DNA of 64,000 nucleotides from Lepidodermella squamata (Eukaryota > Animalia > Gastrotricha): the NCBI GenBank assembly GCA_047495785.1, contig JBLDXI010000015.1, positions 4,030,001-4,094,000 of the forward strand, in the 5' to 3' direction. Each line of letters begins with the position of its first letter. Position 1 is the stretch's first letter. Shown here piece by piece: positions 1,901 through 55,225 of the stretch. The notes under the pieces are model-generated. The model saw nothing but the letters and a program-made list of their open reading frames with translations, was not told the DNA's origin and searched no databases. The translations under genes and the position numbers were made by a program.

Positions 1901-3351
1901 ATGGCTGATCAACCTGTAATCGACACGTTAATTTACCTTCCGGAAAGCCCTAACCGCCCGTTGAAAAACGACTCCACTCGAGCGTTTTGTTTGACAATGG
2001 AAATTTCGCTCGAACTCCTGAAAACTTGCCCGCCGAGCTCCAGCTTGATCGATTCCGCTATTTCCAAATGCAGCAATCTACCTAGCAATTTTGAAGATGA
2101 ATTTTTGGTCGAGTCGTTTGATGAAGTCACAAAACCTCGCTGCTACTCCGCATGTTTCAACAAACTTAACGACAACCGTTGCGTCGACTCGATCGATGCG
2201 GTTCAAAGTGTAATTCGCGAAAATCGTAAAAACATTCCTTTCCTCATTTTTCTTTCGCGAAACTGCGGTGGGCAATTTGTTTCGATTGTAATTAGTGGCA
2301 GCGATAATTTCTTCATCGTTGAGTCTGGCCTGGCTTCAATAACAAAAATCAATTCCATCTCAAACTTGGTATTTCGTCTCGGAAAATTGTGGCCGATGTC
2401 CTCGGAGGATTCAACAGATTTGAACATTTTGGCGCTGAAAATGAAGGATGATGACGAGAGCGGCGAAGGAGCAGATGATCTGAAGGCGATCGTCGAGGCT
2501 CTCCGACTAGAAAATGACCGACTTCGAAGCCAACTCGCAATTATAAATCGAACCCTGGAAATCCCGAACAAGGTCTGAGGCGAAAAGCTTTGTCTTCATT
2601 ACCACCGCTCATTTCGATACCAGAAAATGCAGAAAGCCAAAAATTTCGGGAAGACACGTTCTATTGCCCGATTTGCCTTGAAATTCACTCGGAAGAATTT
2701 GTGTTTTTCATTTCTAATTGCCCGCACCGATTTTGTCGCGCCTGCTCGTTGAAATTCGCTCAAACCGCCGTCGGAGAGCGCTTGATTCCAGTTCGTTGTC
2801 CCGTTCAAGAATGCCGAAGTGAAATTGGCGTTTCAGATCTGGAACTAATTCTTCCACCTGATGATCTCGCCCGGTTGATTAGCTTTACGTTGGACCAAGC
2901 GTTGACAGATATGAATTACGTTCGCTGCCCACAGCCAAACTGTCATGGTGTTGTTGAGCTGTTAGCCCCTCGCCAGAAATTTACCTGCCCGATATGCGCC
3001 TATCAAATGTGTACTGATTGCCGTCGTCGTTGGCATTTTGGCTACTCCTGCGATGGGAAAGCTGATTGGCTGGAGGAAGACCGAGCCGCAGCTTGTCTAC
3101 CCCGCCAGCCAGTTGCTGATAACAAAGCTCAATTCCGCGAGTTTTACAATGCCAAGCAGCTTCAAACCTGTCCGAAATGCGGTCAAATTGTCGAGAAAAC
3201 GGAAGGCTGCAACCACATACCTTGCCGATGTGGCTGGGATTTCTGTTACCTTTGTGGCGAATCGATTCAGTTCAGCCGCAACGGGTATTCGAAGCATGCG
3301 TGCCAAGGTCCCGCCGCTTCTGCTGCTTCAATCCGTTCACTCCGTTTCTGA
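1901..3351 (+). CDS. Gene A1: degenerate VTD-like (pseudo-DUB) domain + coiled coil + RBR E3 ligase (RING1-IBR-RING2), split by a -1 frame break at about 2518-2578
   Basis: ORF 1901-2578 aligns by eye with the gene B DUB domain. ORF 2590-3351 has RING1 (CPIC..CPHRFCRAC..CPVQEC), IBR (CPQPNC..CPIC..CTDC..WH..C) and RING2 (CPKC..EGCNHIPCRCGWDFCYLC). The second ORF has no ATG before RING1, so the two ORFs are probably one gene. Confidence 0.8.
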
Positions 3352-3622: not shown

Positions 3623-5349
3623 ATGGCTAATTTCAGCGGAAGGTTTTCGGGCACTGTGTAAGTTATATTTTTTGCGAAGTTTGAGGTAGTTTATTAGGCA
3701 AAATTAACCGGCAAAATTTCAAACAAGCTTCAGATTTTAGAAATTTTCTGAATTTGTTTTTCAAGCGTGAAAAAATCCGGCGCATTGTAGATCGTTCCAT
3801 GCTCAAATTCCAGAAGGCCTTCAATTTATTAGTAGATTCGATAGTTGGAATATTCTATTATTACTTCTGTTTGACTATAGGAAGAATTTGATTAGCTTCA
3901 ATAGCGAAGAGCGTAAGGAAGAAAAGCTGTATTCAAGCTCGTCTCGACGCACCGCTGAAGTTTTGGAGTTCCCTAGAACTCCCCCAGGCCTGCCAATGAT
4001 TGATCGAGTTGAAGCCGAACGAAGCCAGTACGATGTAAACAGTGAATCCGCTTGCACTCTGATGGCTACAGAAGCGATTCTAAGGTTGCTGAGTGAGGAT
4101 GAAGCCACAGGCAACATGACTCGACCGACTCGACAAATTTTGGAGGAAATTCTTGACACCTGTTCGAACGTCAAATGCGACCATCTAGCTGTTCAAGACC
4201 TCGTAGGCGGTAGCGTTTCTCGCTATTCAAAAGGCTTGAATTTCCACAAGGAAGAGCAACTCCCACTGGAGGATATTCGAAAACTTGCAAAGCTGGTTGC
4301 GAGAGCTGAAGATCGTGGTTCGTTTGCTTTATTGCTCACAAAACCACCTGAATCGATTGCGTTAATCGTCCAATCCGCGACTCGCATCATCGTTTTCGAT
4401 TCGCATCGCCGTCCCCATACTTCAGGCGCTTATTTCGCTGTTGGAAATTCAATGCCGCTGATATTGAAGGAAATTCAATCGATTTGGCCGATCACCGACC
4501 CAGGAATCGGCTACGGAGCGGCTTTACAGTTGGATATGCTTAACACCCTTCAGTTTGCAGTTTTGACGAGAAAGCCGATTCCTCTTGAGCAGCTGCCTGC
4601 GCTTGATCTGTTGCCATTTCTTCATTCTGGCTTGGAGGGTAAAGTTTCGGCGTTGAGTAAGCAGGTCTCCGATCTATCCAGAGAGCTTAAAACTGCTCAG
4701 GTAAACAATTTGACCGCTAACAAGTAAAAATAGGGTTGATTATCAAATTTCCTGAATTTTCCAAAAAATTGCTCAGAATTGAAAACTTTGCCATGATTTT
4801 CAAAAAAATTGAATATATTAGATAAAACGATCATTTCCGAATTCAAACCCATTTTCGTGCTTTTTCTTGCAGTCTCAAATCGTCCAGCTGACGGAACAGA
4901 ATGCTAATATGGTTTCTGAGTTATCGCGATTTTTTACCAGTCTTGTGCGTGTTCAAGCAACATCAGCAGCGAACAATCTCGAAGCGATTAACAAACTCGC
5001 TCAAGATTTCAATTTTCCTCTCAACCGAGAAGTAGTGGCTCCGACGAGTGTCCTGCTGACCCCGACCCCACCGCCAGCTGCCGAGGCACCCATCAGCCGT
5101 TTCAAATGTTGCCAATGCGAGAAGGTCATGTCAAAAGAGTACGTCTTCAGCATGTCGACGTGTCCTCACGAGATGTGCCGCCCTTGTGCTGGTCTATTCA
5201 TCGGCGGGAAAATTCGCGATCGCAGTTATCCGATTTCGTGCCCGATGGCGAAGTGCCGCAAAAAGATGGACGCCGACGATATTGTTCTGGTTTTGACTGA
5301 AGAGCAAATGGCGAAATTCAGCGAACATCAACAACGATTTCAAGTCTGA
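3623..5349 (+). CDS. Gene B1: VTD/herpes-tegument-like deubiquitinase + coiled coil + single RING1-type zinc finger
   Basis: Exons 3623-3657, 3881-4700, 4873-5349 are joined in frame by GT-AG introns. Motifs: RSQY..SACTLMA (Cys codon 4053-4055), LLLTKPPE, FDSH (His 4404-4406), heptad region, CCQC..CPHEMCRPC..CPMAKC. Confidence 0.85.
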
Positions 5350-5477
5350 ATCTTAAAGCTCATCGAACTTCTAATTGAATTGACCTTAAATCAATAATTT
5401 GAAATATAGTGTTCAATATAATCAATTTAGGTCATGCTATAATGATTAGTCTTTAAATAGGAATATTTTGAGATAAA

Positions 5478-7180
5478 ATGGCTTCTCTGCTTAGAAAAAA
5501 TGAACCTTTCCTATGTTTGAAATGCCGTAATATGTCGAGTTTTGAGGACATTTTCGAATCGTCGAATTGCCGGCATCAGTTTTGTCGTAGCTGCGTCTCA
5601 ACCTTTCTACTCGACCATCACCTGCTACGCTGTCCGATTTACCCGCAATGCAAGGCGGAAATGTCGCGCCACGACGCTGCTCTCGTGATCTCGTGATAGA
5701 ATTCTGTACATCGGATTTCACTGGTTTCGAGCTCGAGTTCGCGTCTGACGAACCTGGCCGCGAATCGCCAAGTTTGACACCAGCTGAGCCTGAAGCCCTC
5801 GATTGTGGTATATGTGGTCTGGTAGCCTCGATGGAAGATTTATTCGAAATTTCTACTGTTTGCTCGCATAAGATTTGCCGTGTTTGCTCAGCTTCGTTGC
5901 TGACAAATTCTCCTTATTCAAGTGTAACTAATTGTCTGGTTCCTGGCTGCTTGGTCAAATTTGAGCCGGATCGCGAAGATTTGCTATTCCAGTTTGTTGA
6001 TTTGACGCTGACCCCTCCTCCGGAAACTTTCTCCTGCGAGATTTGCTTGACGACCAAAGACATTTTCGACGTGTTTAAAATTCGCGATTGTCAGCACCAG
6101 ATTTGCCGCGAATGTGCTCGCGATTACATCCGCTCGCTGACTGCCGATATGAAGGAGATGGCGTGTCCTATGCCTTCTTGCAAGGTTAAAAAAAATAGCT
6201 TCATTTTTTTAAATTTTTATCAATTAATTCTTTCATTTCTTCTATAACTAATATATCATAATTTAAATGAATAAAACAAAACTAATAATACCGAAATTAA
6301 TTAATTAACCCCTCCCCCCCTCCAGTGAATACCCTCCAGTGAATACCGGAGGGCTAGGTAATTCTGGACTAAACCATTTCGAGGTTTAGATTCAGTCTCA
6401 ATTCAGAAATTTATGATACCTAAAACTTATCTGCAAAATTTGAAGATTTTACGATTTTGTACCTGATTTTTGGTGATCGGAAACATCTTTTAATAAATTT
6501 GGGCAATTAGCGGGTAATTTTGGAGGCTCATTTGCATATGGATTGGCTTTGTGTGCTTTTAAATAATTTGTATTGAGTTGGGCCAAATTTCGGAAAAATT
6601 GCATCATTTTTTTGAAAAATTGAGATTTTTCGGTACATTCAATACTTTATAATATATTTGAAAATTTAAGGGGGTGCTAACACTGGAAGATGCGGAAATG
6701 GTTGTCCAAGCCGATGAGATGAAGCGCCTTATTGACATGCTGCTTAAAGCCGCTGTCACCGACTGCTTCCATTGCCCGAAGCCAGACTGCCCCGGCCTGG
6801 CTGAGATGGTCGCACCTCGCGTTCTTTTCATCTGCCCAGTTTGCAACTACCACATGTGTACGCAATGCAACGCTGACTGGCATGCGACAGTCACCTGTGA
6901 TGAGTACGCGAAATGGCGCGAAGAAAACGGAGTTGCGGATGCTCGATTCGATGACTACGTCCGCGATTGGAAGGTCCAGGTTTGCCTGAATTGCAGGCAG
7001 GGCGTCGAAAAAACCGAGGGCTGCAACCACATCATTTGCAGTTGTGGAGCTCAGTTTTGGTAAAATAACCTTCTTCAACGTAATAATTCCTTATTTAATA
7101 CTTTTTCTCATTTCAGCTATCTATGCGGAAAGCGTACCCTCAAAGTTGACTGGTCAAAACACGGCAATTGTCAGTTGTAA
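5478..7180 (+). pseudogene. Gene C1: poly-RING RBR E3 ligase, frameshifted near 5690
   Basis: Exons 5478-6184, 6671-7059, 7117-7180 (spliced RING2 ...GAQFCYLCGK). Net 7 nt shorter than C2 at CTCGTGATCTCGTGAT, giving a stop at 5696. Confidence 0.8.
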
Positions 7181-18663: not shown

Positions 18664-19150
18664 ATGGCTGATCAAGCTGTTATCGAGACGTTAATTTACC
18701 TTCCCGAAAGCCCTAACCGCCCGTTGAAAAGCGACTCGACTCGAGCGTTTTGTTTGACAATGGAAATATCGCTGCAACTGCTGAAAAATTTACCTGCCCG
18801 ATTTTTGCCTATCAAATGTGTACTGATTGCCGTCGTCGTTGGCATTTTGGCTACTCGTGCGATGGGAAAGCTGATTGGCTTGAAGAAGATCGAGCCACAG
18901 CCAGCCAGTTGTTGACAACGATCGTTGAGCTTCGAAGCTCAGTTCCGTCAGTTTTACGCTGTCAAGCAGCTTCAAACTTGTCCGAAATGCGGTCAAAAAA
19001 CGTCGAAAAACGTCGAAAATGCGTCGAAAAAACGGACGGCTGCAACCACATGCACTGGCGATGCGGCTGGGATTTCTGCTACCTTCAGCCGTTTCAGTTC
19101 AGCCGTAACGGCTATTCGAAACACGCGCGCCAAGGTCCCGACGCTTCTGC
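18664..19150 (+). pseudogene. Gene A2: deleted, frameshifted copy of gene A
   Basis: MADQAVIETLIYLPESPNRP start joined directly to the IBR second half (about 950 bp equivalent to 2025-2976 missing); RING2 damaged. Upstream 18350-18660 is homologous to 1600-1900. Confidence 0.9.
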
Positions 19151-19570
19151 CACTTCGCTTTGTTATCTTAGCATCTTAATAACCCTTACAATTTTAACGA
19201 TAGGTAATCAAGTAAAAAATTTCAATTTTTCAATTTATAGAAAAATTATTGACAGTTCTTGTTTGTTTTGCTGGCTCATATCGGCGGAAGACTCACAGAC
19301 GCTGTGTAAGTTTTATATTTGGGTATCTTGGCTGATGCGTGGAATAACTTGGCCGCGTGGCTGATGAACCGAACGATGAATCATAGACTATGATTCATGG
19401 GTCATCAGCTTTCAACATTGAAGCTTTATAGCTTTATAGCATATCTGGTGTGATGGCGTTATCGCCAAAAACGCCAAAATGAACGATGGCAACACGCGTT
19501 CATTCATATAAAAAAAAAGTAAAAATCCGAGCCAATTTTTTTATGACCATATCAAAGACGCGCATGTTAT

Positions 19571-20086: not shown

Positions 20087-22053
20087 ATGGCTCGTTCCAG
20101 CGGAAAAATGACAGACACTGTGTAAGTTTTGTATTCTGATGAAGCAAAGGCTAAAGCAAAGAAAAGCATGAAAAGCAACAATATATATCAAAATTTCACC
20201 CGAGGTTACAAAACTCAAGTTGTGAATTTTAAGAATTTAATTTAATTTTGGGCGTGTACGATTTGGTGTTTTCACGAATTACCTGCAATTAAATTCCGCT
20301 AACTGTAAAAGAAAAATAAATTAATATTTATAAGAATTTTGACGACTTTGACGACTTTGACGATGACAATAAATTAAAATAATTGGGCCAGAACTACTAT
20401 AATCGATCAGTTAGATTTACTAGACCTATTGAGTCCATAAATTCGCTTGTTTTTTATGATCACAGGAAGAATCTCATGAACTTGAATGGCGAAGAGCGTA
20501 AGGAAGAAAAACATTCTTCAATCTCGTCACGGCACACTGTTGCAGTTTCGGAATTCACCAGAGCTCCCCCTGGCCTGCCAATGATTGATAGAATCGAAGT
20601 CGATCGAAGCCAGTACGATGTCAACAGCGAATCCGCGTGCACTTTGATGGCTACAGAAGCGATACTAAGGTTGCTGAGTGTCGATGAAGCCACAAGGAAC
20701 ATGCCTCGACCGACAACTCAAATTCTGGAGGAAATTCTTGACACCTGTTCGAACGTCAAATGCGACCATCTAGCTGTTCAAGACCTCGTAGGCGGCGCTG
20801 TTTCTCGCTATTCAAAAGGCTTGAATTTTGGCAAGGAGGAGCAACTTCCCCTGGAAGACATTCGAAAACTCGCCAAGCTAGCTGAAGATCGTTGTCCTTT
20901 TGCGTTATTGCTCACAAAACCACCTGAATCGATTGCGTTAATCGTCCAATCCGCGACTCGCATCATCGTTTTCGATTCGCATCGCCGTCCCCATACTTCA
21001 GGCGCTTATTTCGCTGTTGGAAATTCAATGCCGCTGATATTAAAGGAAATTCAATCGATTTGGCCGATCACCGACCCAGGAATAGGCTATGGATCAACTC
21101 TACAGTTCGATATGCTGAACACCCTTCAATTCGCAGTTTTGACGAGGAAGCCGATTGCCCTTGAGCAGCTGCCTGATCTTGATCTACTGCCGGTTCTTCA
21201 TGCTGGTTTAGAGAGTAAAGTTTCGGCATTGAACAGGCAGGTCTCAGAGCTATCCAAAGAGCTACAAACTGCTCAGGTAAAAAGTTTGACAACTAACAAG
21301 AAAATTAAGGTTTTGCAAATTTCCTGAATTTTTCAATGAATTTGCGTATAATTGAAAAGAACAAGAACTTTCTTTATGGCCCAAACCAGAGTATTTTTCC
21401 GAGGCTCGAGATCATTGGGACGCTCCCCTTTCTCTCACCTTCAGATCCTTTTTTTATGAAGGTGAATGGGACTGCGGAAAGTGCTCGCCAAATTTTGGGG
21501 AAAATTTTGAATTTTTTCTTCGATTGAAATATTGTTTTAATTAGTTCAAAAAGTGACTGCCTGCTTTTTATTGCAGTCTCAAATCGTCCAGCTCCAGAAC
21601 CAGAATGCGTCTATGGTTTCTGATTTATCGCGATTTTTCACCAATCTTTTGCGTGTTCAAGCAACATCAGCAGCGAACAATCTCGAAGCGATTAACAAAC
21701 TCGCTCAAGATTTCAATTTTCCTCTCAACCGAGAAGTAGTGGTTCGGACGAGTGTCCTGCTGACACCAACCCCACCGCCAGCTGCCGAGGCACCCATCAG
21801 CCGTTTCAAATGTTGCCAATGCGAGAAGGTGATGTCAAAAGAGTACGTCTTCAGCATGTCGACGTGCCCCCACGAGATGTGCCGCCTTTGTGCTGGTCTA
21901 TTCATCGGCGGGAAAATTCTCGATCGCAGTTACCCCATTCTGTGCCCGGTGGCGAAGTGCCGCAAAAAGATGGAAGTCGACGATATTCTTCTGGTTTTGA
22001 CTGAAGAGCAAATGGCGAAATTCAGCGAACATCAACAACGATATGGCATCTGA
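20087..22053 (+). CDS. Gene B2: VTD-like deubiquitinase + coiled coil + RING1-type finger (intact)
   Basis: Exons 20087-20121, 20466-21276, 21577-22053 in frame; SQY, SAC and FDSH motifs present. Confidence 0.85.
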
Positions 22054-22192
22054 AAAATGCCATCATTGGACTTCAAAATGAATATTTGAAACTTGACCTT
22101 GAATGAATAATTGAAATAGTGATAAATATAATCAATTTAGGTCATGCTAATGACTATAGACTATAGTTATTCTATAGGTATTTGGATATAAA

Positions 22193-24016
22193 ATGGCTTC
22201 TCGGCATACAAGAAACCAACCTTTCCTATGTTTGAAGTGCCGTAAAATGTCGAATTTCGAGGACATTTTCGAATCTTCAAATTGCCGCCATTTGTTTTGC
22301 CGTAGTTGCGTCTCGACTTATCTACTCAGCCACCACCTGCTGCGCTGTCCGATTTACCCGCAGTGCAAGGCAGAAATTTTGCGCCACGACGCTGCTCTTG
22401 TGATTGGCGACGATAATCTAGAATTCTGTACATCGGATTTGACTGGCTTCGATGCGTACGAGTTCGCGTTTGACGAACGTGGCCGCGAATCGCCAATATT
22501 CACACCGTTCAAGCTTGAAGTCTTCGATTGCTGTGTATGTGGTCTGATAGCTTCTATGGAAGATTTGCTCGAAACTTCCACTATTTGCTCACATAAGATT
22601 TGCGGCGTTTGTTCAGCTTCGCTCGAGATTTTCCCCTATTCAAGTGGAACTAGTTGCCCGGTTCCTGGCTGCTTCGAGGCCGAATCGGGCCAAGGTCGAG
22701 CCGAATTCGAGCCGGATCCGGAAGATTTGCTGCTTCGAGTTGCTGGTTTGACGTTGACGCCTCCTCCGGAAACTTTCTCCTGTCAGATTTGCTTGACGGA
22801 CAAATCCATTTACGACGTATTTAAAATTCGCGATTGTCAGCACCAGCTTTGCCGCGAATGTGCTCGTGAATACTTCCGCAGCTTAGCGGACGACATGAAG
22901 AAGTTGGCGTGTCCTATGCCTTCTTGCGAGGTTGTAAATTTATTTTTCAAATGAACTTATGTCGAATTATATTAATGATTGATTTTTGCATTTTATCCAA
23001 TAATTATTACTAAAATCAATAAATCAATTGTTTTCGGTCAAAAAACCGTAGGGTAGGGTAATTCTGGTCCAGGTCATGATTTTTAGGTTTAAAAATCAGT
23101 CAAAATTCATAAATTTTCGATACTTGGCACAACGGTGTGTAAAGTGATTTCCGATTTATCTGCAAAATTTGATGATTTTACGATTTTTACCTGATTTTTG
23201 GTGATCGAAAAAGTTTGAATAAAGTTATGCTTAAGGGAGTAATTTTGCAAAGCTTTGGCTTGTGAGTTTTTAGCTTTTATTGAGTTCAATAATTAAATTT
23301 CGAAAAATTTTAATTTTTGTTTCAAAATTATATTTTGGATTTTTTTTACATTCTTACTTATAATTTTAAAATTTAAGGGGGTGCTAACGCTTCAAGACGC
23401 CGAAACTGTGGTTGATGCTGATGAAATGAAGCGTCTCACTGACATGCTGCTGAAAGCCGCTGTCACCGACTGCTTCCATTGCCCAAAGCCAGACTGTCCC
23501 GGGTTGGCTGAGATGGTGCCACCTCGCTTCATTTTCATCTGCCCAGTTTGCGACCACCGCATGTGTACCCGGTGCAATACTGACTGGCATGCGACAGTCA
23601 CGTGTGAGGAGTACGCGAGGTGGCGCGAAGAAAACGGAGCCGCCGATCAGCGGTTAAATGACTACGTCCGCCGTCAGAAAGTCCAGGTTTGCCCGGATTG
23701 CAGGCAGGGTGTCGAGAAAACCGAGGGCTGCAACCACATGACATGCCGCTGCGGGGCTCATTTTTGGTCAGTTTCTTATTGAATTGTCAAAAATCACTCA
23801 ACTTGAAAATATCTTCTTAGTTACCTATGCGGCCAACGGTTCCAGAGAGCGGGTTGGGAACCCCATGGCTCTTGTCCTTTGTTCAGTGCTACTTCTGATG
23901 ACCTAACATCATGATGTATTGCTTTTTCCAGTTATCTATGCGGGAAGCGGACTTATAATACTGACTGGCCAAAACACGGCAATTGCCAGATGTTTGATGA
24001 TGTGAACAGTGATTAG
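22193..24016 (+). CDS. Gene C2: RBR E3 ligase with three RING1-type fingers, IBR and RING2; two alternative terminal exons
   Basis: Exons 22193-22930 and 23378-23766, then either 23821-23914 or 23932-24016. Catalytic GCNH intact. Confidence 0.88.
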
Positions 24017-34183: not shown

Positions 34184-37100
34184 ATGAGCTTCTCGACCGA
34201 TTATTATTATCATGCTTCGCCCTCTGATTCCGGTGATAGGACTACTGGTTCTAGAAAAAAGGATTCAACAGTGGATGGTGATGAACGCAAGCATTCTTCA
34301 AGCTCGTCAAGCAAACGCTCAACTACGACTGAGGCTTCCTCATCTCCTCCTTGGATGGAACGAATTGAACTACAACGAAGTCAATATAACGTCAACAGCG
34401 AATCAGCTTGCACTCTGATGGCTGCTGAGGCCGTTCTGCGACTTTTAAGCCCCGATGAATTCTCTGACCATCTAGCCGAGCCCACTATCAAAACTTTGGA
34501 AGAAATTCTCGATACGTGTTCAAACGTGAAATGCGATCATCTAGCTGCGCAAGACCTCTTCGACGGCAGTATTTATCGATATTCGATGGGGTTGGCATAT
34601 AGCACGGAAAATCAAATGCTACTTAAAGATATTGATAAACTCGCCAAGTTGGTAGCGAAATCGCTGGACAGTGGCCCGTTCGCTCTATTGCTGACCAAAC
34701 CGCCTGAATCGATTGCTTTGATCGCCCAATCTGCGACTCGCTTCATTTTATTCGACTCGCATCGCCGCCCCCATACTTCAGGTGCTTATTTCTCTGTCGC
34801 TAATTCTATCACTTCGATTTTGAGTGAAATTCAATTTATTTGGCCGGTTACGCGTTTCGATGACGGCTTCGGCTCGCAAATTGAAATGCTGAATACTCTC
34901 CAGTATGGAGTGATTTCTCGTAAACCAACTCCGCTTCAACAGCTGCCCCATCTTGATTTGTTGCCCATGCGACATTCTAGTTTGGAAGCTAAATTTTTGG
35001 ATTTGGCGAAGCAGGTCTCCACTCTTAATAAGGAACTTGGTGCCGCTCAGGTAAGATTACCTTCAAGATTTGTGCTCAAGATAAATATAGAATTGTCCCT
35101 TCGAACGAATGAGAAAAATGAGCGAGAATGAATAGAAAGCCATTTTTCAATGAAATTTTAAGTTGGATTTTTTATTATTTATTATTTTGCGTTGCGAAAA
35201 ATATAGACACCGTGTAATATTTTACGATACAACATTCGTAGAAACCTATATTTTCGTGAAGCACTCGTATAGATCGAGTAAAACTCATTCACCTCGTGAA
35301 ATCTCGTCTCCACTCGCCTGCCGGCTCGTTCCGCCTCGATTTCACTCGTTTCATTCGTTTTACTCGATCTATATTTCGTGCTTCACTCAAATATAGATTC
35401 CTACTCATGTTATATCATACAAATATAGCATTCGCTCAAAAATATACAGGGTGTTCAAGAAATAATGGTTGGGCTATTTTTGGAATTGAACTTTGGCCAG
35501 ACGACACGCGATTGATGACAGCGACCTATTTCCACTTTGACATCAAACCTTGACCTCGTTGTTTTACGTCTGCTTCTAACATGTTTTTTTATCGTGTGAC
35601 GGAGAAAGAAAAAACAAATGAAAAAAATGTTAAAACAAAAATCCAACTCAAGAAGTCGTAAGTCTCGTAAGCAGATGAGCGATAAAGTCGATGACAAGTA
35701 CTACTAAGAATTCCTCAGCCAAGTTCACCACCCAATACTGAAAAAAAGAAATATTCATGATCTTCCGGTCCTTTAATCTTCCTTTAATTGTCATCCTATT
35801 CTCCGTTGATTTACTTTTTCATATTTCAAATCTTATATGTTGAATTTAAAAATTGCATGATTTGGGCAAATTTCAAGCAAAGAAAAATGTTATCATGAAC
35901 AATAATTTTCTGCTATGACCTATGACAGCGCGACTTTGGGAAAAATATCACGTTTCTTCTGGCCAATGTCCAACTCCAAAAATAGTTCAACAATTATTTA
36001 CCATTGAACTTTGAACCAGTGAATTCCTGACAGGGCACGCGTTTGCTTGCTCGTCTTACTGAACTTACTAAACTTCAATTTTTCAGGTTTAAGGGTTTAA
36101 ATACTTTGTCCCTAAAAATGACTAAACATTGGCGCGAAAGTATTGAGGAAAGACGCGTTCAAAAACTCAAAGCACTCGCCGTCCAGTTTCTTTCAAAATT
36201 TGAAAATATTTATCGCGTGCTGTCTGGTTAAAGTTCATTCTATAATTAGATTAGATATTATTTCTTGAACACCCTGTAGTGTTAGTACCCATGCTCATGC
36301 GATATTTATAGATATAGTAGTCGCAATTCATTCATATCTGGATTCGGATTCCGCCTCGCCAGCATGCCCGCATCTCGTGCTACGAATCTCAGATAAGAAT
36401 AAAAAAACTCATACAATATCATACAAATATAACATTTTAAGCGTGTTTCATAAAATTTAGGTTGCAAATATTCGCAGGCAGCTCATTAGTTTTCTAAAAA
36501 TTAATTTGAATTCAGCATAATCTTTAATGTGAACAACAGCGCGAAGAATTTGCAACCATTTTCCTTTTTTACAAATTACAAATTTACAAAATTACAAAAA
36601 AGAAACATCTTATCAATTCAGCATAATCACAAATTAATTAAATATTAATTTCCCAGAATTCAAGCATTAAATAAGAATCAATTCAAGTACCATTGTTTTA
36701 AATTTCAAATTTGCCGGGGTAATATTATCGGTATTTTATCCGTTTAGGCCGAATTCCTCATGATTTTTCTCCTAAAAATAGGACATCGCCCTTTTTTACT
36801 TTTTGCCGTGTTTTTACGAGCTTGCTCAGAACAATATTTTCCCATTTTTTCCGAGCTCACTAAAAAAACAAAAGGTCGCCCAGCCAAGTGCTACTAGCCA
36901 AGCCTGACGCTGGTTAACTTCGGTTAACGTACTGGGACAGTTTAGTTTGAGTGGTATGGCGGTAACCAAGAACCGCATACTTGAAAGTAAATACACCGTT
37001 TCATTCGGGTCCCCCACAGAGTAGCAGGCTTCAAATAAAGCACAGAGCAACAAATGGTGCAAACACCAGATTAAATTGCAACAAATCACAGAAGCATTAA

Positions 37101-38847
37101 AGTGAAATAAAAAACGTGTTTACTCGATTTTTTTGAGTGCGCGCGGACACACGTGTTACGCAATGCGTTGCAAGTCATGCTCGTGTGTGCATGTCTTTAA
37201 AATAGCGCATGGACATGATGATTGCTCATTCGTTTTATTTGATTTATTTGATTATTTGATGGCATTTCAAAACTTCATTCTTTAAACTGCTTACTGCTAT
37301 TATTTTGACGGCTAAAATCGTCGCCAACCTGAAAATGTTGCTAGCGATGCTCCTCCGGCCAGTCTAGGCCGGGATCGGCCACCGAAGAATGCTGGCGCAG
37401 TTTCAGAGCAACCAATGAAACGTGGCCGCGGTCGCCGCCGTGAAACCCAACGCAGCTGTTACGAGTCTGAAAAAGCGGCGCGCGCAGAATAAGACTATGA
37501 CGTCCGATTGCGAAATTGTGTAAAACTGTGCTGAAATGCCATGTAATTTTGTTACATACCTGGATAGCTTGATCGCTTAAATCTCAATCTCAATCTTCAA
37601 TCTCAATAAAATAAATAAAATCGCAAGCAAATAAAAAATGTTTCACCTGGTTGCGCACCTCAAAAAGTGGTCCTAATTGCTTCGCGAAAATCACTACTTG
37701 CATGCCACCAGCATTAAGCAGCTTTGGTTTAACACGCGGTGTTAATCTAATTAATAACGTTTATTTTACTTAGAAGCCTTTTTTTAATTTACATGGAAGC
37801 CATACTGCTTTGAAGCGTTTAATTTGAAGCCTGCTATTAAATTTTCCCTACTTTGTAGGGGACCCTTTCATTCTCTACAAGAAAATCTCGGTTCAACCCG
37901 AGAAAATCGCCGGCATTTCCGAAAAAGCCGCTTCGAAACGAATAATTGCGACTTTTTCCACGAACTTGAAATACGGAATAAAAGAGAGATAGATACCGAT
38001 TTATTAGTGGTCAGCGTTACACAATTCTTAAAATCACTATAACATTACGGCAGAAATAGTGTAAAAGAGAAGCAAAACTATATGGTAAAAACTTGGCGAA
38101 GTAATTTTGCCGTGTTTTTACCGCAGATTTTGTTTAACGGGCTTTCACGGCAAGCGTGTTTTTACGAAATTTTGCCGGGAAAACCTTGTAAAACTACGGT
38201 AAACTTTGTATTACGATTACGCCTCTCCTTTCGTAGATTAAAATTGTAAAATTGTAAATTTAAAAACTGTAGATCTCCCCTCAATGATTTTTTTCATCCT
38301 AATGATTAGGCTACGATTTCGAGGGCGGTCGTGGCAACTTTCTAGTTGAATCTTTTTTCTTCTGCCATTTTAGTCGCGAATTGTTGAGCTTGAAACAAAA
38401 AATGCAAGCATTATTTCCGACCAGTCGCGATTCTTCCACAGCCTTCTGCAAGTTCAGGCCGCATCAGCCGCTAACAATGCCGAGGCGATCAACAAGCTGT
38501 CTCGCGAATTCAACTTTCCACTGAATTCAGCAAACGCTGCTATGCCGATTGCGGTGCCGGTCGCTAAAAATCCGCCCGAAAAACCGATTATTAGCACTTT
38601 CCATTGTAGCAAATGCCGTAAGACTCTGTCGAAAGAACACGTCTTCAGCATGTCGACATGTTCTCACGAATTGTGCCGTCCTTGCGCTAGCGTGTACATC
38701 GGTGACAGAGTTTGGGAAAAGAAGTATCCAATCGCGTGCCCAGTCCCAGAATGCCGCAAGAATATGGATCCAGAGGATATATATCTTGTCTTGGATGGGA
38801 AACTAATGGAATCATTCCACCCGAATCTACAGCGCTATTGTTTCTAA
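34184..38847 (+). CDS. Gene B3: VTD-like deubiquitinase + coiled coil + RING1-type finger (intact)
   Basis: Exons 34184-35050 and 38374-38847, phase-0 intron of 3.3 kb expanded by insertions; catalytic motifs intact. Confidence 0.83.
35447..36276. mobile_element. Non-autonomous Tc1/mariner element in the B3 intron
   Basis: Perfect 20-bp TIR CAGGGTGTTCAAGAAATAAT with TA on both flanks. Confidence 0.9.
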
Positions 38848-38981
38848 AATTTCTTGAGCTGATTAATTCGAACGATGATTGATTGATTGCTTTCAGTGCC
38901 GTAATATCCAATACCCATTCTTATATCCAAGAATCAAATGAAAAAATTATTTAATCTCTTCATCATTTAGGCTTTTTATAA

Positions 38982-41803
38982 ATGGCAACAAGTCGACCAA
39001 GTACTGGCAGTCGTCTGAACAGCTCTCGTCCCGAATCTGCCACAAACAATTACGAGAATTTTCTCTGTTTGAAATGTCGTAAATCGTGGAGTTATGAGGA
39101 CATCTTCGAGTCGTCTATTTGCGGCCACGTATTTTGTCGACATTGCGTGACATCTTTCATCCTTGACCGCTACTTTTTGCGCTGTCCAATGTACCCGCGT
39201 TGCCAGGCTGAACTGTCTCGCGAGGAAGTTGCTTTAGTCATGGATGAGAGCGACATTTTGGACTTCTGCACCTCAGATGTTGCTGTCGGCACTGAACAAG
39301 AATGGAAACCGCCGCAGGCTCAAAATGAACATGATAATGAAAGTGTGGATCCCGATGCAACCAAGTGTGGCATTTGCGACGTTGTCAGTTCGAACGACGA
39401 TCTTTCCGAAATTTCTACCGTTTGTGCGCATCGAACAGGCCGCGAATGCGCTGCCGCGGGGCTGAGTCAGGCAGACATGCCGGTAGCAGCTGAAAATACG
39501 CCCGAAAAACCAATTATTAGCACATTTGACTGTTGTCAATGCCGTATTACTATGTCGAAAGAACACGTCTTCAGCATGTCGACCTGTTCCCATGAAATGT
39601 GCCGCGAGTGTGCTGGTTTGTACATCGGAAACAGAATTCGGGTCATGAATTATCCAATTGTGTGCCCAGTCCCAGAATGCTGTAAGACAATGGATCATGA
39701 AGATATATACCTTGTGTTGACTGAAATGCAAACGGTATTATTCAACTTGTATAGATCATATGCTGCTGGCGGCTTTGACCAGGAATGGAAACCACCAGAG
39801 CTTGGCAATAAACAAAGTGCCGATCCCGATGCAACCAAGTGTGACATTTGTGATGTTATTGCCAGTTCGGGCGACGATCTTTTCGAAACTTCTACCGTTT
39901 GTGCGCATCGAATATGCCGCGAATGTGCTGCGACGTGGCTGCGCTTGGCTCCTAATAGCATCTCAAGCATTAGATATTGTCCGATTCCGGACTGTATAAT
40001 CAGATTTGATCAAAGCCGCAAGGAATCCTTGCTCCAATTCGCTGATTTGCTGCTGACGCCGCCTCCGGAAGAATTTTTGTGTGAAATCTGCTTCACGACT
40101 CAATTCATTTTCGACGTCTTCCAGCTTCGCGATTGCCAGCACCAGATTTGTCGCGAATGTGCTCGTGAATACATCCGATCGCTGACTGACGATATGAAGA
40201 AGATGACGTGTCCTATGACCGATTGCAAGGTTCGAAAATATTATTTGAATCGCCAATATTAATAATTAATAAGTTTTTATAGATAATTTACGTTTAATAA
40301 CACCTTAAATTGTATTACCGTATTTTACGAATTATAAGACCCTGCCCTGTATTTTTTTCAAACGAGGTTCAAGTCCTGCCCTGTATTTAGGGTCTGCCCT
40401 TTATTTCGGGTCTGCCCTTTAATTTTTCGAACCTAATCAGTCACCTGAAGAGTACCTAGATTAACAGTTAAAACCGCCGAATAACCACTATAGCTACTGC
40501 CTTCCACCTGTGACTACACGCGTGAAGTGTGTGTTCAAGTGGATTAAGGTGGATAAAGGACGATTAGTGCACTTACTGACGAAAAATCGCAACCTATCAA
40601 ACTTTAACCACTTACCAGCAGGCACCCATGTAAGCCATTTCATACAAGGCCCTGCCTATTAATACGGTTCTGCCCTTTATTATTTCAAATGACCATTACC
40701 CTCTGCCCTTTATTCCGGTTCTGCCCTATAATTGGGTCCTGCCTAATAATTCGTTAAATACGGTATATTTAATGCACCCTTATTTTATAATTTCTGAGAT
40801 CAGCGGGTATTGCTGTCCGGGTCGGCGTCCATCATTTGCGCCATAGAACTTTTGCACCGTGCGACACTCCAAGCTCCATTGGCACCATGCCGACTTGAAC
40901 GAGTGTTGTGCGGCTTCGATTGGCCTATTAGTTTTTGGGTTCAAATTTAGGGTTCCAGAACTAATTTTCTAGATGTTTCTAATTTCTAGTTCTCCTTTGA
41001 ATCTCATTTCTTACCGGGCTTCATCAATGCATCTCACTATTACATTACTATTACGTATATTTTGCGCTATGGCCGGTCAGTTTAGGAGAGGTCATATTTG
41101 ATGCAGTGCCGACATCCCTTGCAATAGGTATTTATTTTTAAAATATCAGTGATTTTTCCGATAGCAGTTCCGAAAGCAGTCTATAGAAAACCAACATTAA
41201 ATTTTCCTATTTGAGTTACGAATGTATCAAGGCCATTGGTTTTATTTTAATTCTATGCGTATTTATTTATTCCCTTTTAGGGAGAACTGACACTTCAAGA
41301 CGCCGAAACTGTGGTCGAAGCTGATGAAATGAAGCGTCTCACTGACATGCTGCTGAAAAAAGCTGTCATCGACTGCTTCCACTGCCCAAAGCCAGACTGC
41401 CGTGGCTTGGCTGAGATGATCCCACCTTGCGTTCGGTTCATCTGCCCCGTTTGTAACTACCACATGTGCACCCGGTGCAATACTGACTGGCATGCGACGG
41501 TCACCTGTGAGGAGTACGCGAGGTGGCGCGAAGAGAACAGAGCTGCTGATCAGCGGTTTACTGACTACGTCCGCGATAAGAAAGTCCAGGTCTGCCCGGC
41601 TTGCAAGCAGGGTGTCGAAAAAACCGAGGGCTGCAACCACATGACATGCCGCTGTGGGGCTCATTTTTGGTGAGTTTCTTTGAATTGTCAAAAATTGCAG
41701 AACTTGGAGATGCCCCTTTAGTTACCTATGCGGCAAAAGGTTCCAGAAACCGGGCTGGGAACCACATGGCTCTTGTCCTTTGTTCCGTTATGACAATATA
41801 TGA
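38982..41803 (+). CDS. Gene C3: poly-RING RBR E3 ligase (4 complete + 1 partial RING1-type fingers, IBR, RING2), intact
   Basis: Exons 38982-40229, 41281-41669, 41722-41803 in frame; GCNH catalytic motif. Confidence 0.88.
40318..40763. mobile_element. Tc2/pogo-like MITE in the C3 intron
   Basis: TIR CCGTATTT(T/A)ACGAATTAT (17/18 match), TA flanks, multiple internal CTGCCCT(G/T)TA repeats. Confidence 0.88.
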
Positions 41804-45741: not shown

Positions 45742-47434
45742 ATGAGCTTCTTTACCGATTATTATCATCATGCTTCGCCTTCTGATTTCGGTGATAGGAC
45801 AACTGGTACCAGAAAGAAGGATTCAACAGTGGATGGTGATGAACGCAAGCATTCTTCAAGCTCGTCAAGCAAACGCTCAACTACGACTGGAGCTTCCTCA
45901 TCTCCTCCTTGGATGGAACGAATTGAAATACCGCGAAGTCAATATAACGTCAACAGCGAATCAGCTTGCACTCTGATGGCTGCTGAGGCCGTTCTGCGAC
46001 TTTTAAGCCCCGATGAATTCTCTGACCATCTAGCCGAGCCCACTATCAAAACTTTGGAAGAAATTCTCGATACGTGTTCAAACGTTGAATGCGACCATCT
46101 TGCTGCTCAAGATCTGTTCGACGGCGGTATTCATCGGTATTCGATGGGGTTGGCATACCACTCGGAAAAGCAAATGCCACTTCAAAATGTCGATAAACTC
46201 GCCAAGCTTGTAACGAAAACGTTGGATAGTGGCCCGTTCGCTCTATTGTTGACTAAACCGCCTGAATCAATTGCTTTGATCGTACAATCGGCGACTGGAT
46301 TCATTTTATTCGACTCGCATCGCCGACCTCATACTTCAGGTGCCTATTTCTTTGTCGCAAACTCTATAGCTTCGATTTTGAGTGAAATTCAATTTATTTG
46401 GCCGGTTACACGTTTTAATGACAGCGTCGGTTCGACTCTGCAACTTGAAATGCTAAATACACTTCAGTATGGGGCGATTACTCGGAAACCAACTCCGCTT
46501 CACCAGCTGCCCCATTTGGATTTATTGCCCATTCGACATACTAGTTAGGAGAGTGAAGTTTCGGATTTGGCGAAGCAGGTCTCAACACTTGTCAAGGAAC
46601 TAGGTGCAGCTGAGGTAAGATGGCTATCAAGATTTGTACTCGTAAATATTGTTCAGGCTTCGTGAAATTTGCGAATATTCCTTTCTCTATTCGCAGGCAT
46701 CCCATCAATTTACCAAAATTAATTTAAATTTAAAATAATTAAACATTAATTATTTTCAATGATTTTCAAAGAATTTAACCATTAAAGCAAATAACTTACC
46801 ACTGTTTTAAATTTAAATCTATCTTGTAAACCGGGGTATCTGGTTCGGTTATATTCGGTATTTTACCAGGTTAGACCGAATGCCTCCGGACCTTTCTTCA
46901 TCCTATCCTTTCGAGGACAGTTGTTGAATCTTTTCAACTGAATCTTGTACTTTTCCCCCATTTCAGTCGCGAATCGTTGAGCTCGAAACAAAAAATGCGA
47001 GCATGGTTTCAGACCTGTCGCGATTCTTCACCAGCCTTCTGCGAGTTCAGGCCGCCTCATCCGCTAACAGTACCGAGGCGATCAACAAACTGGCTCTTGA
47101 ATTCAACCTTCAACTGAACCAAGCAACCGCTGAATCAGCTACTCCGGCAGCTAAAAATACGCCCGAAACACCGATTATTAGCACTTTCGATTGATGCCAA
47201 TGCCGTAAGACTATGTCGAAAGAATACGTCTTCAGCATGTCGACCTGTTCTCACGAAATATGCCGCCCCTGCGCTAGCATTTACATCGGTGACAGAGTTT
47301 GGGACAAGCAGTATCCCATTGCGTGTCCAGTCCCTGAATGCCACAAGATAATGGATCCAGAGGATATCTACCTTGTCTTGGATGGGAAACTAATGGAATC
47401 ATTCGACTCGAACCTACAGCGCTATCGTTATTAA
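45742..47434 (+). pseudogene. Gene B4: DUB domain intact but premature stops at 46546-46548 and 47192-47194
   Basis: TTG>TAG at the start of the coiled coil and TGC>TGA in the first RING Cys; exons 45742-46614 and 46967-47434. Confidence 0.85.
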
Positions 47435-47558
47435 AATGTTTCGATATGATAAATTCGAACGCTGATTCATCGCTTGCTTTGATCTCATCCAATACCCATA
47501 CATTATATATCCAAGAATCAATTGAAAATTACTGTCTTCATCATTTAGGCTTTTATAA

Positions 47559-48670
47559 ATGGCAGCAAGTCGACCAAGTACTGGCAGTCGTCTGAACAAC
47601 CCTTGCGAATCTGCCATAGATTACCATTTCTCTCTCTCTCTCTTTCTCTGTTTGAAATGCCGTGAAATGTCGAGTTTGGAGGATGTCTTCGAGTCGTCCA
47701 ATTGCGGCCATCTATTTTGTCGACGTTGTGTGACATCTTTCATCTTTGACGGCTACCTTTTACGCTGTCCGATGTACCCGCGTTGCCAGGCTGAACTGTC
47801 TCGCGAGGAAGTTGCTCTAGTCATCGACGAGAGCGACATTTTAGACTTCTGTACATCGGACGTAGCTGATGGTTTTGAAGAAGAATGGAAGAAGATGACA
47901 TGTCCTATGACCGATTGCAAGGTTCGGAAATATCTTTTTTTTTATTTTAATCTAAATAATAAAATTTTTAGGAATTTTCGAATTTTATTTTAATCTATAA
48001 AATTTTAATTTTTTAAATGTCAATAGTTAAAAACTGCTGAAAATTAATTTGCACCAAAAGATCGGCGAGATGCTGTGTAAAGATGTGTTGATCTCGTTGA
48101 TCTTAAGCAAAAAAGAATCATTAAAATATCACGCTTTTTTTTATTCTCTGCAAGCCGCGGCGTCCTATAATCATTCTGGCATCAGCAGTCTAGGGTCTAG
48201 GAAGCCACCATTAATCATGACCATTAATTGTTTCTACCTAGCTTATGGTAACCATCATTCATTGCATGAGTTCCAGATAGGAACATACAGCCCTGACAAT
48301 CTCTAGTTATAAAGTGTACAGATAAGAGGAAAATAATAGTCAGTTCAAATCATAGGATTTTTCAGGGGTAGCTATTTTTGCCCTCCAGGCGTTTATGGTA
48401 ACCATAGCAGAATAAAAAATCCCAGGATCAAAATGGAACCGAAGTATCGATCAAGAAGACAGAAAAGCCGAAATCTCAAAGAATCGGAAGACATTATTTT
48501 GAGGGCGCCTAAATTCAAAGCTCGAACCTCAATTTTAATTATGAAAATATGACGGCTCTTTGTTTTATCTGAATTCTTTACTTATTTATTTATTCTTTTC
48601 TAGGGAGAACTGGCGCTTCAAGATGCCGAAACTGTCGCCGAAGCTGATGAAATGAAGCGTCTTACTGACA
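47559..48670 (+). pseudogene. Gene C4: internally deleted, truncated RBR gene
   Basis: First RING fused to the tail of the last RING (EEEW-KKMTCPMTDCK). The IBR exon at 48604 breaks at 48670 into B-C intergenic-type sequence. Confidence 0.85.
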
Positions 48671-53139: not shown

Positions 53140-53178
53140 ATAGGACAGAAAACTGGTAGTAGAGTGAAGGATTCAACG

Positions 53179-55085: not shown

Positions 55086-55225
55086 GGCATGTCGTTTTTG
55101 CCTGCCCTTGCCCTGATAAATTCGAACGATGATTGATCGCTTGCTTTATTAGTATCCGATACCATTGCCTTGAATATCCAAGAAGCAAATGAAAAAATGA
55201 CTTCTCTGAATACCTTAGGCTTTTA

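What the first reader, a model, noticed from the sequence alone, without database searches (positions are those of the whole stretch)
3623..7180. B + C looks like a split version of gene A (fission of a DUB-RBR protein)
Seen: A = DUB-like/CC/RING1/IBR/RING2 in one unit. B stops right after one RING1-type finger, and C supplies more RINGs plus IBR-RING2 about 125-140 bp later in every unit. Inference: an ancestral DUB-RBR fusion resolved in two ways, by killing the DUB (A) or by separating DUB and ligase into two polypeptides (B, C). B's orphan RING could bind E2~Ub in trans or compete for it.
Basis: inference. Interest (0 to 1): 0.7.

Follow-up and report, generated by a model that had tools for sequence, protein, structure and literature searches.

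The report
Split deubiquitinase–ubiquitin ligase gene pair
In an invertebrate-like genome, an enzyme that elsewhere combines a ubiquitin-removing and a ubiquitin-adding part in one protein is encoded as two neighbouring genes about 130 bases apart, an old split repeated six times here and seen in another organism.

Summary
The domain layout is real. Gene B (3624-5349) encodes a VTD-type cysteine deubiquitinase with its Cys/Asp-x-His residues, a helical stretch and one RING1-type finger, then stops. The VTD assignment rests on a profile match to PDB 8ADB (E 9e-17) and an AlphaFold model (pLDDT 94) whose best fold matches are 8ADC/8ADB. Gene C starts 128 nt later (5478-7180) and encodes three RING1-type fingers, an IBR and a RING2 with the catalytic Cys, which makes a complete RBR ligase.

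The B stop, a 123-140 nt spacer and the C ATG are kept in all six tandem units, despite saturated synonymous divergence, and in a metagenomic contig from another organism. More distant VTD relatives carry RING1-IBR-RING2 in the same polypeptide, and such fusions are published for fungi. So B+C is best read as an old fission of a VTD-RBR fusion, inside a duplicated RING1 array.

- Gene A's two halves lie in different frames as assembled.
- A's N-domain is only weakly VTD-like (hhalign E 1e-3) and lacks Asp/His.
- C of this unit has a frame break after its first RING.
- Two of the six B copies are pseudogenes.
- The split is ancient.

Co-expression as an operon is inferred, not shown. This is a new variant of a known kind.

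The parts
1901..2578 (+). Gene A, first reading frame: divergent N-domain (probable dead VTD, with ESG in place of DSH) plus a helical stretch; stop at 2576-2578
2518..3351 (+). Gene A, second reading frame (open from 2518): RING1-IBR-RING2 with all zinc ligands and GCNH. It is out of frame with 1901-2578
3624..3658 (+). Gene B exon 1 (ATG 3624, donor GTAAGT at 3659)
   Evidence: frame arithmetic on the sequence
3881..4700 (+). Gene B exon 2: VTD deubiquitinase domain (about 3993-4625; Cys in SACT, Asp-x-His in FDSH) and the start of the helical stretch
4873..5349 (+). Gene B exon 3: helical stretch, one RING1-type finger (5101-5268), linker helix, stop TGA 5347-5349
5350..5477 (+). B-C spacer, 128 nt, AT-rich. 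It has further in-frame stops, an AATAAT and acceptor-like TTTAG|G / AATAG|G sites before the ATG
5478..5696 (+). Gene C, first frame: ATG and RING1-type finger 'a' (5508-5663). It runs into TGA TAG at 5691-5696 because of a 7-nt net indel relative to unit 2
5730..6184 (+). Gene C, second frame: RING1-type fingers 'b' (5798-5962) and 'c' (6029-6184); donor GT at 6185
6671..7059 (+). Gene C exon with the linker helix, IBR and most of RING2 (catalytic Cys in EGCNH)
7117..7180 (+). Gene C last exon: end of RING2, stop TAA 7178-7180
18664..19364 (+). Unit 2 remnant of A: first 44 residues joined to a decayed IBR-RING2 that has lost Cys ligands
20473..24016 (+). Unit 2: intact B (to stop 22051-22053) and intact C (ATG 22193; exons to 22930, 23378-23766, and two alternative last exons at 23822 and 23933)
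34184..41803 (+). Unit 3: intact B with a 3.3-kb intron insertion (exons 34184-35050 and 38374-38847) and intact C (ATG 38982), which has an extra in-frame B-type RING
45742..48735 (+). Unit 4: B pseudogene (two in-frame stops) and a truncated C
53161..57586 (+). Unit 5: intact B (stop 55083-55085) and intact C (ATG 55226), which has two extra in-frame B-type RINGs
59869..64000 (+). Unit 6: B pseudogene (in-frame stop, frameshift) and a chimeric C that runs off the window

Best explanation
The flagged region is the first unit of a six-fold tandem array of gene pairs in an invertebrate-like genome.

Gene B makes a viral-tegument-like (VTD) cysteine deubiquitinase with its catalytic Cys and Asp-x-His intact, a helical stretch and one RING1-type finger. 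Gene C begins 123-140 nt after B's stop. It makes three to five RING1-type fingers followed by IBR and a catalytic RING2, which is a complete RBR ubiquitin ligase.

More distant relatives carry VTD, helical stretch, RING1, IBR and RING2 in one polypeptide. B and C are therefore the two halves of an old gene fission. The break lies in the linker between two copies of a tandemly duplicated RING1 module, so each half kept a finger and C kept a whole RBR (inferred). The fission predates the array and is shared with at least one other organism (shown).

Gene A is a divergent unsplit paralogue. Its N-domain has lost the catalytic Asp and His, and as assembled it is frame-broken.

How it works is inferred, not shown. 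B and C are probably co-transcribed from one promoter, with C's mRNA freed at the acceptor-like site just upstream of its ATG, so the deubiquitinase and the ligase are made together. C would build ubiquitin chains through its RING2 cysteine. B would trim them, on C itself or on shared substrates, possibly K6-linked chains, as do its nearest characterised relatives.
For: VTD identity of B:
- phmmer to 8ADB gives E 0.014, aligning SACT and FD(S/P)H.
- A six-copy profile gives E 2.7e-5 and a 38-sequence profile gives E 9e-17 to 8ADB and 5e-4 to 8ADD.
- The AF2 model has pLDDT 94. Its top Foldseek hits are 8ADC/8ADB (E 1e-10, TM 0.65), then 8ADD, M48 (2J7Q) and AvrPphB.
- Cys, Asp and His are invariant or nearly so across the 38 sequences.

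RBR identity of C and A:
- Pfam IBR and RING hits.
- PDB hits to RNF216, ARIH1 and HOIL-1.

Two cistrons:
- A stop at the same place and an ATG in an A-rich context in all six units.
- At least three in-frame stops after each B stop.
- An in-frame TAA directly before the C ATG in units 3, 4 and 6.
- No conserved donor at B's end.
- Intron positions and phases inside B and C are conserved in every unit.

Constraint:
- dN/dS is 0.1-0.3 in the VTD, RING and IBR-RING2 parts.
- dS is above 1.3 between units 1-2 and units 3-6.

Split shared elsewhere:
- Contig L002 holds a C-like 3' end, then B-like P0005 (VTD, helices, one RING, stop), then 135-156 nt, then an ATG and a RING 'a'-like finger.
- P0003 has the same B-like layout.
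- L002's finger groups with the window's 'a' fingers at 90/97.

Fused ancestors:
- At least 14 of the 124 VTD relatives carry IBR-RING2 downstream in the same protein.
- L004 carries VTD-helices-RING1 and then IBR-RING2.
- Agaricomycete VTD-RBR fusions are reported in PMC9741609.
- In the VTD tree the unsplit forms are scattered outside a 98/98 clade that holds the window's B copies and the other proteins without an RBR.

Module exchange:
- B-type fingers sit in frame inside C of units 3 and 5.
- One of them is 98% identical in DNA to B's exon.
Against: - There is no transcript or protein evidence, so separate mRNAs, an operon or rare B-C fusion transcripts cannot be told apart.
- The source organism is unknown, so trans-splicing is only assumed.
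- In the flagged unit itself C is frame-broken and A is frame-broken. Only units 2, 3 and 5 have both B and C intact.
- The order of A, C and the L002 C-like gene in the IBR-RING2 tree is unresolved (AU p about 0.5 both ways).
- A's RING1 is not placed. That A descends from the unsplit ancestor rather than from a later re-fusion is therefore not shown.
- L004's fusion needs one frameshift to read through.
- The fused state could in principle have arisen more than once.
- C has no helical stretch, so no B-C contact surface is evident.
Confidence: 0.62

Rival explanations
1. B and C are one gene. An intron removes B's stop and the spacer, so a single VTD-multiRING-IBR-RING2 protein is made and the 'split' is a reading artefact.
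For: The genome has many short introns. In unit 1 a GT lies just before the stop (CAA|GTCTGA) and AG sites lie near the C ATG. Fused relatives exist.
Against: The GT before the stop is not conserved in units 2-6. The stop, the ATG and its A-rich context are conserved in six paralogues with saturated dS and in L002. In units 3, 4 and 6 an in-frame TAA sits directly before the ATG. In L002, whose genes of this family read as uninterrupted ORFs, B-like still ends in a stop and C-like starts with an ATG.
Confidence: 0.1
2. The direction is reversed for A. The split B|C state is ancestral in this lineage, and A arose later by re-fusion or deletion between a B copy and a C copy, then diverged fast.
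For: A occurs in only two of six units, which form one 16.7-kb duplicate, while B|C is shared with another organism. The IBR-RING2 tree does not reject A grouping with the window's C copies (AU p 0.49).
Against: A's RING1 does not nest among the B, 'a' or 'b' fingers. A's N-domain is far more diverged from B (no BLASTP match) than B is from P0001-P0005 (31-37% identity). That points to an old paralogue. The tree equally allows A to lie outside C plus L002 (AU p 0.50).
Confidence: 0.15
3. B and C are a true fission, but they are now independent genes with separate promoters and unrelated roles. Their adjacency is only a relic.
For: No interaction surface or transcript link is shown. Compact genomes can have short spacers.
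Against: The spacing stays within 123-140 nt across copies whose synonymous sites are saturated, and is 135-156 nt in another organism. That leaves little room for a 3' end plus a promoter. The pair is always duplicated together.
Confidence: 0.15
4. The array is a decaying, non-functional family, and the layouts seen are chance products of rearrangement.
For: Pseudogenes and chimeras are present: B in units 4 and 6; C in units 1, 4 and 6; A and its remnant. LINE and Crypton-like elements lie between units.
Against: dN/dS is 0.1-0.3. B and C are both intact in units 2, 3 and 5. Catalytic residues are invariant and splice sites are conserved.
Confidence: 0.05

Closest known systems
VTD (viral tegument-like) deubiquitinases, Wc-VTD1 / fungal-protist subgroup (Erven et al. 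2022, PMC9741609; PDB 8ADB, 8ADC)
   Same: B's N-domain matches by profile (E 9e-17) and by fold (TM 0.65). It keeps the Cys and Asp-x-His triad. The best hit is the K6-specific Waddlia enzyme.
   Different: It sits in an animal-like genome; the paper reports this subgroup from fungi, protists and bacteria. Sequence identity is about 20%. Activity and linkage preference are untested.
VTD-RBR fusion proteins of Agaricomycetes and protists (PMC9741609), and the fused proteins found here (P0017, P0023, P0048, P0059, P0096 and others)
   Same: The same domain order, VTD, helical stretch, RING1, IBR, RING2, which is what B and C add up to and what A shows.
   Different: Here the order is cut into two genes after a RING1. 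The ligase half has three to five RING1-type fingers instead of one. The genes form a tandem array.
RBR ubiquitin ligases (RNF216, ARIH1/2, HOIL-1, parkin)
   Same: A and C have RING1-IBR-RING2 with the RING2 catalytic Cys. The best solved match is RNF216, E 2e-15.
   Different: They have several tandem RING1-type fingers before the IBR. To my knowledge no solved or named RBR has this, but that is recollection, not a test. No helper domains of the named families are present.
Spliced-leader operons of nematodes and tunicates
   Same: The two genes are on the same strand. The spacer is about 110-140 nt, like the roughly 110 bp median in Caenorhabditis (PMC7986045). An acceptor-like (T)nAG lies just upstream of the downstream ATG.
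   Different: No spliced leader, transcript or organism identity is available. In rotifers, the group of the only relative from a named species, trans-splicing is known but operons are not reported.

Membership tests
VTD deubiquitinase family (gene B N-domain) | Significant sequence or profile similarity to established VTD domains | tested here: met
   8ADB E 9e-17 and 8ADD E 5e-4 with the 38-sequence profile; E 2.7e-5 with the window's copies alone
VTD deubiquitinase family (gene B N-domain) | VTD fold (papain-like core as in Wc-VTD1, DrT1-VTD and M48) | tested here: met
   Model pLDDT 94; the Foldseek top hits are all VTD or M48 structures, probability 1.00
VTD deubiquitinase family (gene B N-domain) | Catalytic Cys plus the Asp-x-His pair | tested here: met
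   SACT and FDSH are present in every B copy that covers them: FDSH in all six, SACT in the five that reach it. Across 38 relatives D and H are invariant and C is present in at least 90%. The triad is defined in PMC9741609.
VTD deubiquitinase family (gene B N-domain) | Cleaves ubiquitin chains | not testable with these tools
   Needs an enzyme assay
VTD deubiquitinase family (gene A N-domain) | Significant similarity to VTD domains | tested here: inconclusive
   BLASTP to B is not significant. hhalign to the VTD profile gives E 0.0011, probability 21%, over 132 collinear columns. There is no PDB hit.
VTD deubiquitinase family (gene A N-domain) | Catalytic Asp-x-His | tested here: not met
   ESG aligns with DSH. 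If this is a VTD, it is an inactive one.
RBR ubiquitin ligases (gene C and gene A) | RING1, IBR and RING2 in this order, with complete zinc ligands | tested here: met
   Pfam IBR E 1.7e-18 (A) and 5e-13 (C), above the cut-off; ligand patterns
RBR ubiquitin ligases (gene C and gene A) | Catalytic Cys in RING2 | tested here: met
   EGCNH is conserved in A, in all C copies and in L002
RBR ubiquitin ligases (gene C and gene A) | One uninterrupted coding sequence in this unit | tested here: not met
   A has a frame mismatch at 2518-2623. C of unit 1 has a 7-nt net indel at about 5690. C of units 2, 3 and 5 is intact.
Gene fission of a fusion protein | Unsplit homologues in outgroups | tested here: met
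   At least 14 fused VTD-RBR proteins, scattered outside the split clade; PMC9741609
Gene fission of a fusion protein | Two adjacent, collinear, same-strand genes with a conserved stop and start | tested here: met
   Six units plus L002
Gene fission of a fusion protein | Two separate mRNAs and proteins | not testable with these tools
   No transcript data
Spliced-leader operon | Short same-strand intercistronic distance | tested here: met
   123-140 nt
Spliced-leader operon | Spliced leader added at an acceptor upstream of the downstream gene; polycistronic precursor | not testable with these tools
   Only acceptor-like TTTAG|G sites 9-45 nt before the ATG. No SL RNA gene was found in the window by Rfam.

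The most novel reading that the evidence does not exclude
B and C form a non-covalent two-subunit ubiquitin-editing machine that evolved from a single chain. C's array of three to five RING1-type fingers, only some of which keep the usual E2-contact residue, and B's matching finger would serve as docking or regulatory modules that bring the VTD deubiquitinase onto the RBR ligase in trans. The pair would be made in fixed proportion from a dicistronic transcript, in an animal group where operons have not been described.
Probability: 0.15. Interest if true: 0.75.

Novelty: new variant of a known kind. Interest (0 to 1): 0.5.

Why it matters
Pairs of a deubiquitinase and a ligase are a recurring theme in ubiquitin signalling, and VTD-RBR fusions are a recently described, functionally unexplained example. 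A natural, conserved split of that fusion gives matched 'one-chain' and 'two-chain' versions of the same machine. It therefore offers a direct way to ask what the physical link is for.

The finding also extends the Wc-VTD1-like subgroup of VTD enzymes to an animal-like genome. It shows an RBR ligase with multiple RING1-type fingers, which is unusual. The tightly kept 123-140 nt spacing raises a testable question about polycistronic expression.

It does not settle any long-standing problem.

Tried and rejected
- **Word-index protein searches.** Searches with B's N-domain and with a full C exon gave nothing. A's RBR found only one distant stand-alone RBR, P0125, which I used as an outgroup.
- **Exact look-ups.** Ten window ORFs were not in the collection.
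- **Collection scans.** Two JGI metagenome scans, one with the VTD alignment and one with the IBR-RING2 alignment, and one IMG/VR scan found no relatives.
- **First AlphaFold run.** With the six paralogues only, the model was useless (pLDDT 37) and was not searched.
- **Trees.** The IBR-RING2 and RING trees could not order A, C and L002 or place A's RING1. I draw no direction for A from them.
- **Programmed -1 frameshift in A.** I considered it and rejected it, because the 2518-2578 overlap has no slippery heptamer (read from the sequence).
- **Stop-codon readthrough from B into C.** Rejected, because each spacer holds several further in-frame stops.
- **Transposon cargo.** I found no terminal repeats bounding the B-C units; I ran no dedicated search for them. 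The units differ in length mainly through inserted LINEs and ion-channel genes.
- **Source organism.** Rfam and tRNA scans gave nothing that identifies it.
- **Coiled coil.** The label was not tested with a dedicated predictor. Pfam gave only weak zipper-like hits.
Full report
**Scope and rules**

The window is not human. It carries nicotinic/5-HT3-like Cys-loop channel genes, LINE and Crypton-like elements, and introns of about 55 nt, at about 42% G+C. All searches and folds used single exons or ORFs by reference. I built no joined (spliced) protein for any search or fold, and that step is left out. No gene here is a toxin or effector. Broken copies are described only.

**What is there**

The flagged stretch is unit 1 of six tandem units, starting near 3.6, 20.4, 34.1, 45.7, 53.1 and 59.9 kb.

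Gene B in unit 1:
- Its exons are 3624-3658, 3881-4700 and 4873-5349, 443 codons.
- Its GT-AG introns keep their positions and phases in every unit.
- It encodes an N-domain, a helical stretch and one C3HC4 RING1-type finger plus a linker helix, then TGA (5347-5349).

Gene C in unit 1:
- It starts at ATG 5478.
- It encodes RING1-type fingers 'a', 'b' and 'c'. After a 486-nt intron come a linker helix, IBR and RING2 with EGCNH. After a 57-nt intron comes the end of RING2, and the stop is at 7178-7180.

The B-stop to C-ATG spacers are 128, 139, 134, 124, 140 and 123 nt.

**The 'DUB' is a VTD domain**

Pfam and the word search were blank. The VTD assignment rests on these results:
- B's N-domain matched PDB 8ADB (Waddlia Wc-VTD1), aligning the Cys (SACT) and FD(S/P)H (E 0.014).
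- The window's six copies as a profile gave E 2.7e-5.
- The full HMMER scan of 1.84 billion proteins found only 124 relatives.
- A 38-sequence profile then gave E 9e-17 to 8ADB and 5e-4 to the Helitron VTD 8ADD.
- With that alignment AlphaFold gave pLDDT 94.
- Foldseek ranked 8ADC/8ADB, 8ADD, the cytomegalovirus M48 protease and AvrPphB first.
- Asp and His are invariant and Cys nearly invariant across the 38 sequences. This is the triad shown by mutagenesis in PMC9741609.

**Is B+C a split fusion?**

The unsplit layout exists elsewhere. At least 14 of the 124 relatives have IBR-RING2 downstream of the VTD in the same protein. L004 has VTD-helices-RING1 followed by IBR-RING2, although it needs one frameshift to read through. 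PMC9741609 states that most Agaricomycetes encode a VTD fused to an RBR ligase.

In the VTD tree, the window's B copies form a 98/98 clade with P0003, P0005 and P0004 (from two ENA metagenome assemblies) and with P0001 and P0002. P0001 comes from a Logan assembly of run DRR314038. P0002 is from the bdelloid rotifer Adineta ricciae. No member of this clade has an RBR in the same ORF. The fused forms are scattered among the other branches.

The split itself is shared with another organism. Contig L002 reads, in order:
- the 3' end of a C-like gene (IBR-RING2, stop);
- B-like P0005 (VTD, helices, one RING, stop);
- a spacer of 135-156 nt;
- an ATG followed by a finger that groups with the window's 'a' fingers at 90/97.

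P0003 has the same B-like ending.

Within the window, units 1-2 and units 3-6 differ by dS above 1.3 in B. Even so, all keep the stop, the spacer length and the ATG, and dN/dS is 0.1-0.3.

**Could B and C still be one ORF?**

I found no path that joins them:
- Each spacer holds at least two further in-frame stops.
- Units 3, 4 and 6 have an in-frame TAA directly before the C ATG.
- The GT that precedes the stop in unit 1 is not conserved.

Without transcripts this remains an inference, though a strong one.

**Where the break lies**

B's finger and C's fingers are modules of one kind. B-type fingers occur in frame inside C of units 3 and 5. One stretch of C in unit 5 is 98% identical in DNA to B's own exon. 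Finger 'c', next to the IBR, forms its own group (99/99). B-type, 'a' and 'b' fingers cluster loosely together (80/83).

The simplest history is this. RING1 was duplicated in tandem within an unsplit gene. A stop and a start then arose in a linker between copies, leaving a DUB with one finger and a complete RBR. This history is inferred.

**Gene A**

- Its RBR half is intact and clearly related to C: 41% identity, E 1e-32. A, the window's C copies and L002's C-like gene group together at 83/92.
- The order within that group is unresolved (AU p 0.49 and 0.50). A's RING1 is not placed.
- Its N-domain shows no BLASTP similarity to B. It has a weak but collinear profile match to VTD (E 0.0011), and ESG stands where DSH should be. 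'Dead VTD' is therefore likely but not proven.
- As assembled, 1901-2578 and the RBR frame (open from 2518) do not join. The candidate 51-nt intron (2573-2623) misses the frame by one base, next to an A-run. This is either a recent lesion or an assembly error.
- The only other copy, in unit 2, is a deleted, decayed remnant.

**State of the copies**

| Unit | B | C | A |
|---|---|---|---|
| 1 | intact | 7-nt net indel after finger 'a'; readable only with an unproven 47-nt intron through sequence that is coding in all paralogues | frame-broken |
| 2 | intact | intact | decayed remnant |
| 3 | intact | intact | none |
| 4 | in-frame stops | truncated | none |
| 5 | intact | intact | none |
| 6 | in-frame stop and frameshift | chimeric | none |

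This is a birth-and-death array.

**Mechanism (inferred)**

The conserved 123-140 nt spacing matches operon spacing in Caenorhabditis, whose median is about 110 bp (PMC7986045). Acceptor-like (T)nAG sites lie just before the ATGs of B and C. Both fit co-transcription with the downstream mRNA freed by trans-splicing. The organism and its RNA are unknown, and in rotifers operons have not been reported.

By analogy with DUB-ligase pairs, and with the K6 specificity of the closest characterised VTDs, I propose that C assembles chains and B trims them, on C itself or on shared targets.

B-type fingers in the window read C-C-Q-C, C-S-K-C or C-C-R-C where A, 'b' and 'c' read C-x-I-C. The importance of that hydrophobic position for E2 binding is recalled knowledge (HHARI, parkin). 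I did not test it here.

**Comparison with what is known, and verdict**

VTD enzymes and VTD-RBR fusions are published. I found nothing in the paper library on:
- a conserved split of the fusion into two adjacent genes;
- its tandem amplification;
- the multi-RING1 ligase half;
- the occurrence of this VTD subgroup in an animal-like genome.

I rate it a new variant of a known kind, of moderate interest.

Noticed in passing
window 24132-25298 (-), 28274-29413 (-), 31292-32434 (-), 44004-44783 (-): Four paralogous, nearly intron-free Cys-loop ligand-gated channel genes lie between the B-C units on the opposite strand. Their best solved matches are 5-HT3A and nicotinic receptor subunits. They appear to have been duplicated along with the array.
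   Followed up: partly
window 8989-14137 (+) and 51345-53051 (+): LINE-type retrotransposons sit between units. One has an ORF1-like 725-aa ORF plus an endonuclease/reverse-transcriptase ORF at 55% G+C. A second has a reverse-transcriptase ORF just upstream of unit 5's B.
   Followed up: partly
window 15881-17366 (+): Two adjacent ORFs carry DUF3504 and a phage-integrase-type tyrosine recombinase domain (Crypton-like). They are split by a stop.
   Followed up: no
window 35051-38373: In unit 3, B's second intron is 3.3 kb, against about 170-630 nt in the other units. It contains a MITE-like pair of 42-nt inverted repeats (35445-35486 and 36237-36278) beginning TACAGGGTG.
   Followed up: partly
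window 54703-55002 vs 55962-56261: A 300-nt stretch of B's last exon in unit 5 recurs inside C of the same unit at 98% identity. This is a very recent copy or gene conversion that adds a B-type finger to the ligase in frame.
   Followed up: partly
window 23822-23911 and 23933-24016: Unit 2's C has two alternative copies of its short last exon, each preceded by an AG and each completing RING2 with a different tail.
   Followed up: no
window, IBR-RING2 exons 6671-7059, 23378-23766, 41281-41669, 57062-57450, 63625-64000: Synonymous divergence between units 1-2 and units 3-6 is much lower in the IBR-RING2 exon (dS 0.3-0.7) than in B's VTD exon (dS 1.4-5.9, saturated). This suggests gene conversion that homogenises the ligase's catalytic end.
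   Followed up: partly
window 34174-34186 and 45732-45744: B of units 3 and 4 has a strong acceptor-like TTTTTTACAG two bases before its ATG. C of units 3-6 has a conserved TTTAG|G about 9-13 nt before its ATG. The pattern resembles spliced-leader acceptor sites.
   Followed up: partly
L009 8001-9431 (Adineta ricciae, GCA_905250025.1) and L003 881-2650: Among the window's closest VTD relatives, P0002 and P0001 carry two VTD domains in tandem (a degenerate one, then an intact one) followed by a helical tail. Neither has a RING or an RBR in the ORF, and no RBR gene was called within the 8 kb on either side of P0002 in A. ricciae.
   Followed up: partly
L008 3983-4855 and 5321-6067: In a second metagenome assembly, a VTD-plus-helices gene in which Ser aligns with the catalytic Cys (P0004) lies 466 nt upstream of a P0003-like gene. 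Tandem VTD genes therefore occur in that organism too.
   Followed up: no
L004 99-1885: In a 56% G+C contig, the VTD-helices-RING1 ORF and the IBR-RING2 ORF overlap in different frames. This is a second case, besides gene A, of a frame break inside a VTD-RBR gene. It could be an assembly error or a real feature.
   Followed up: no
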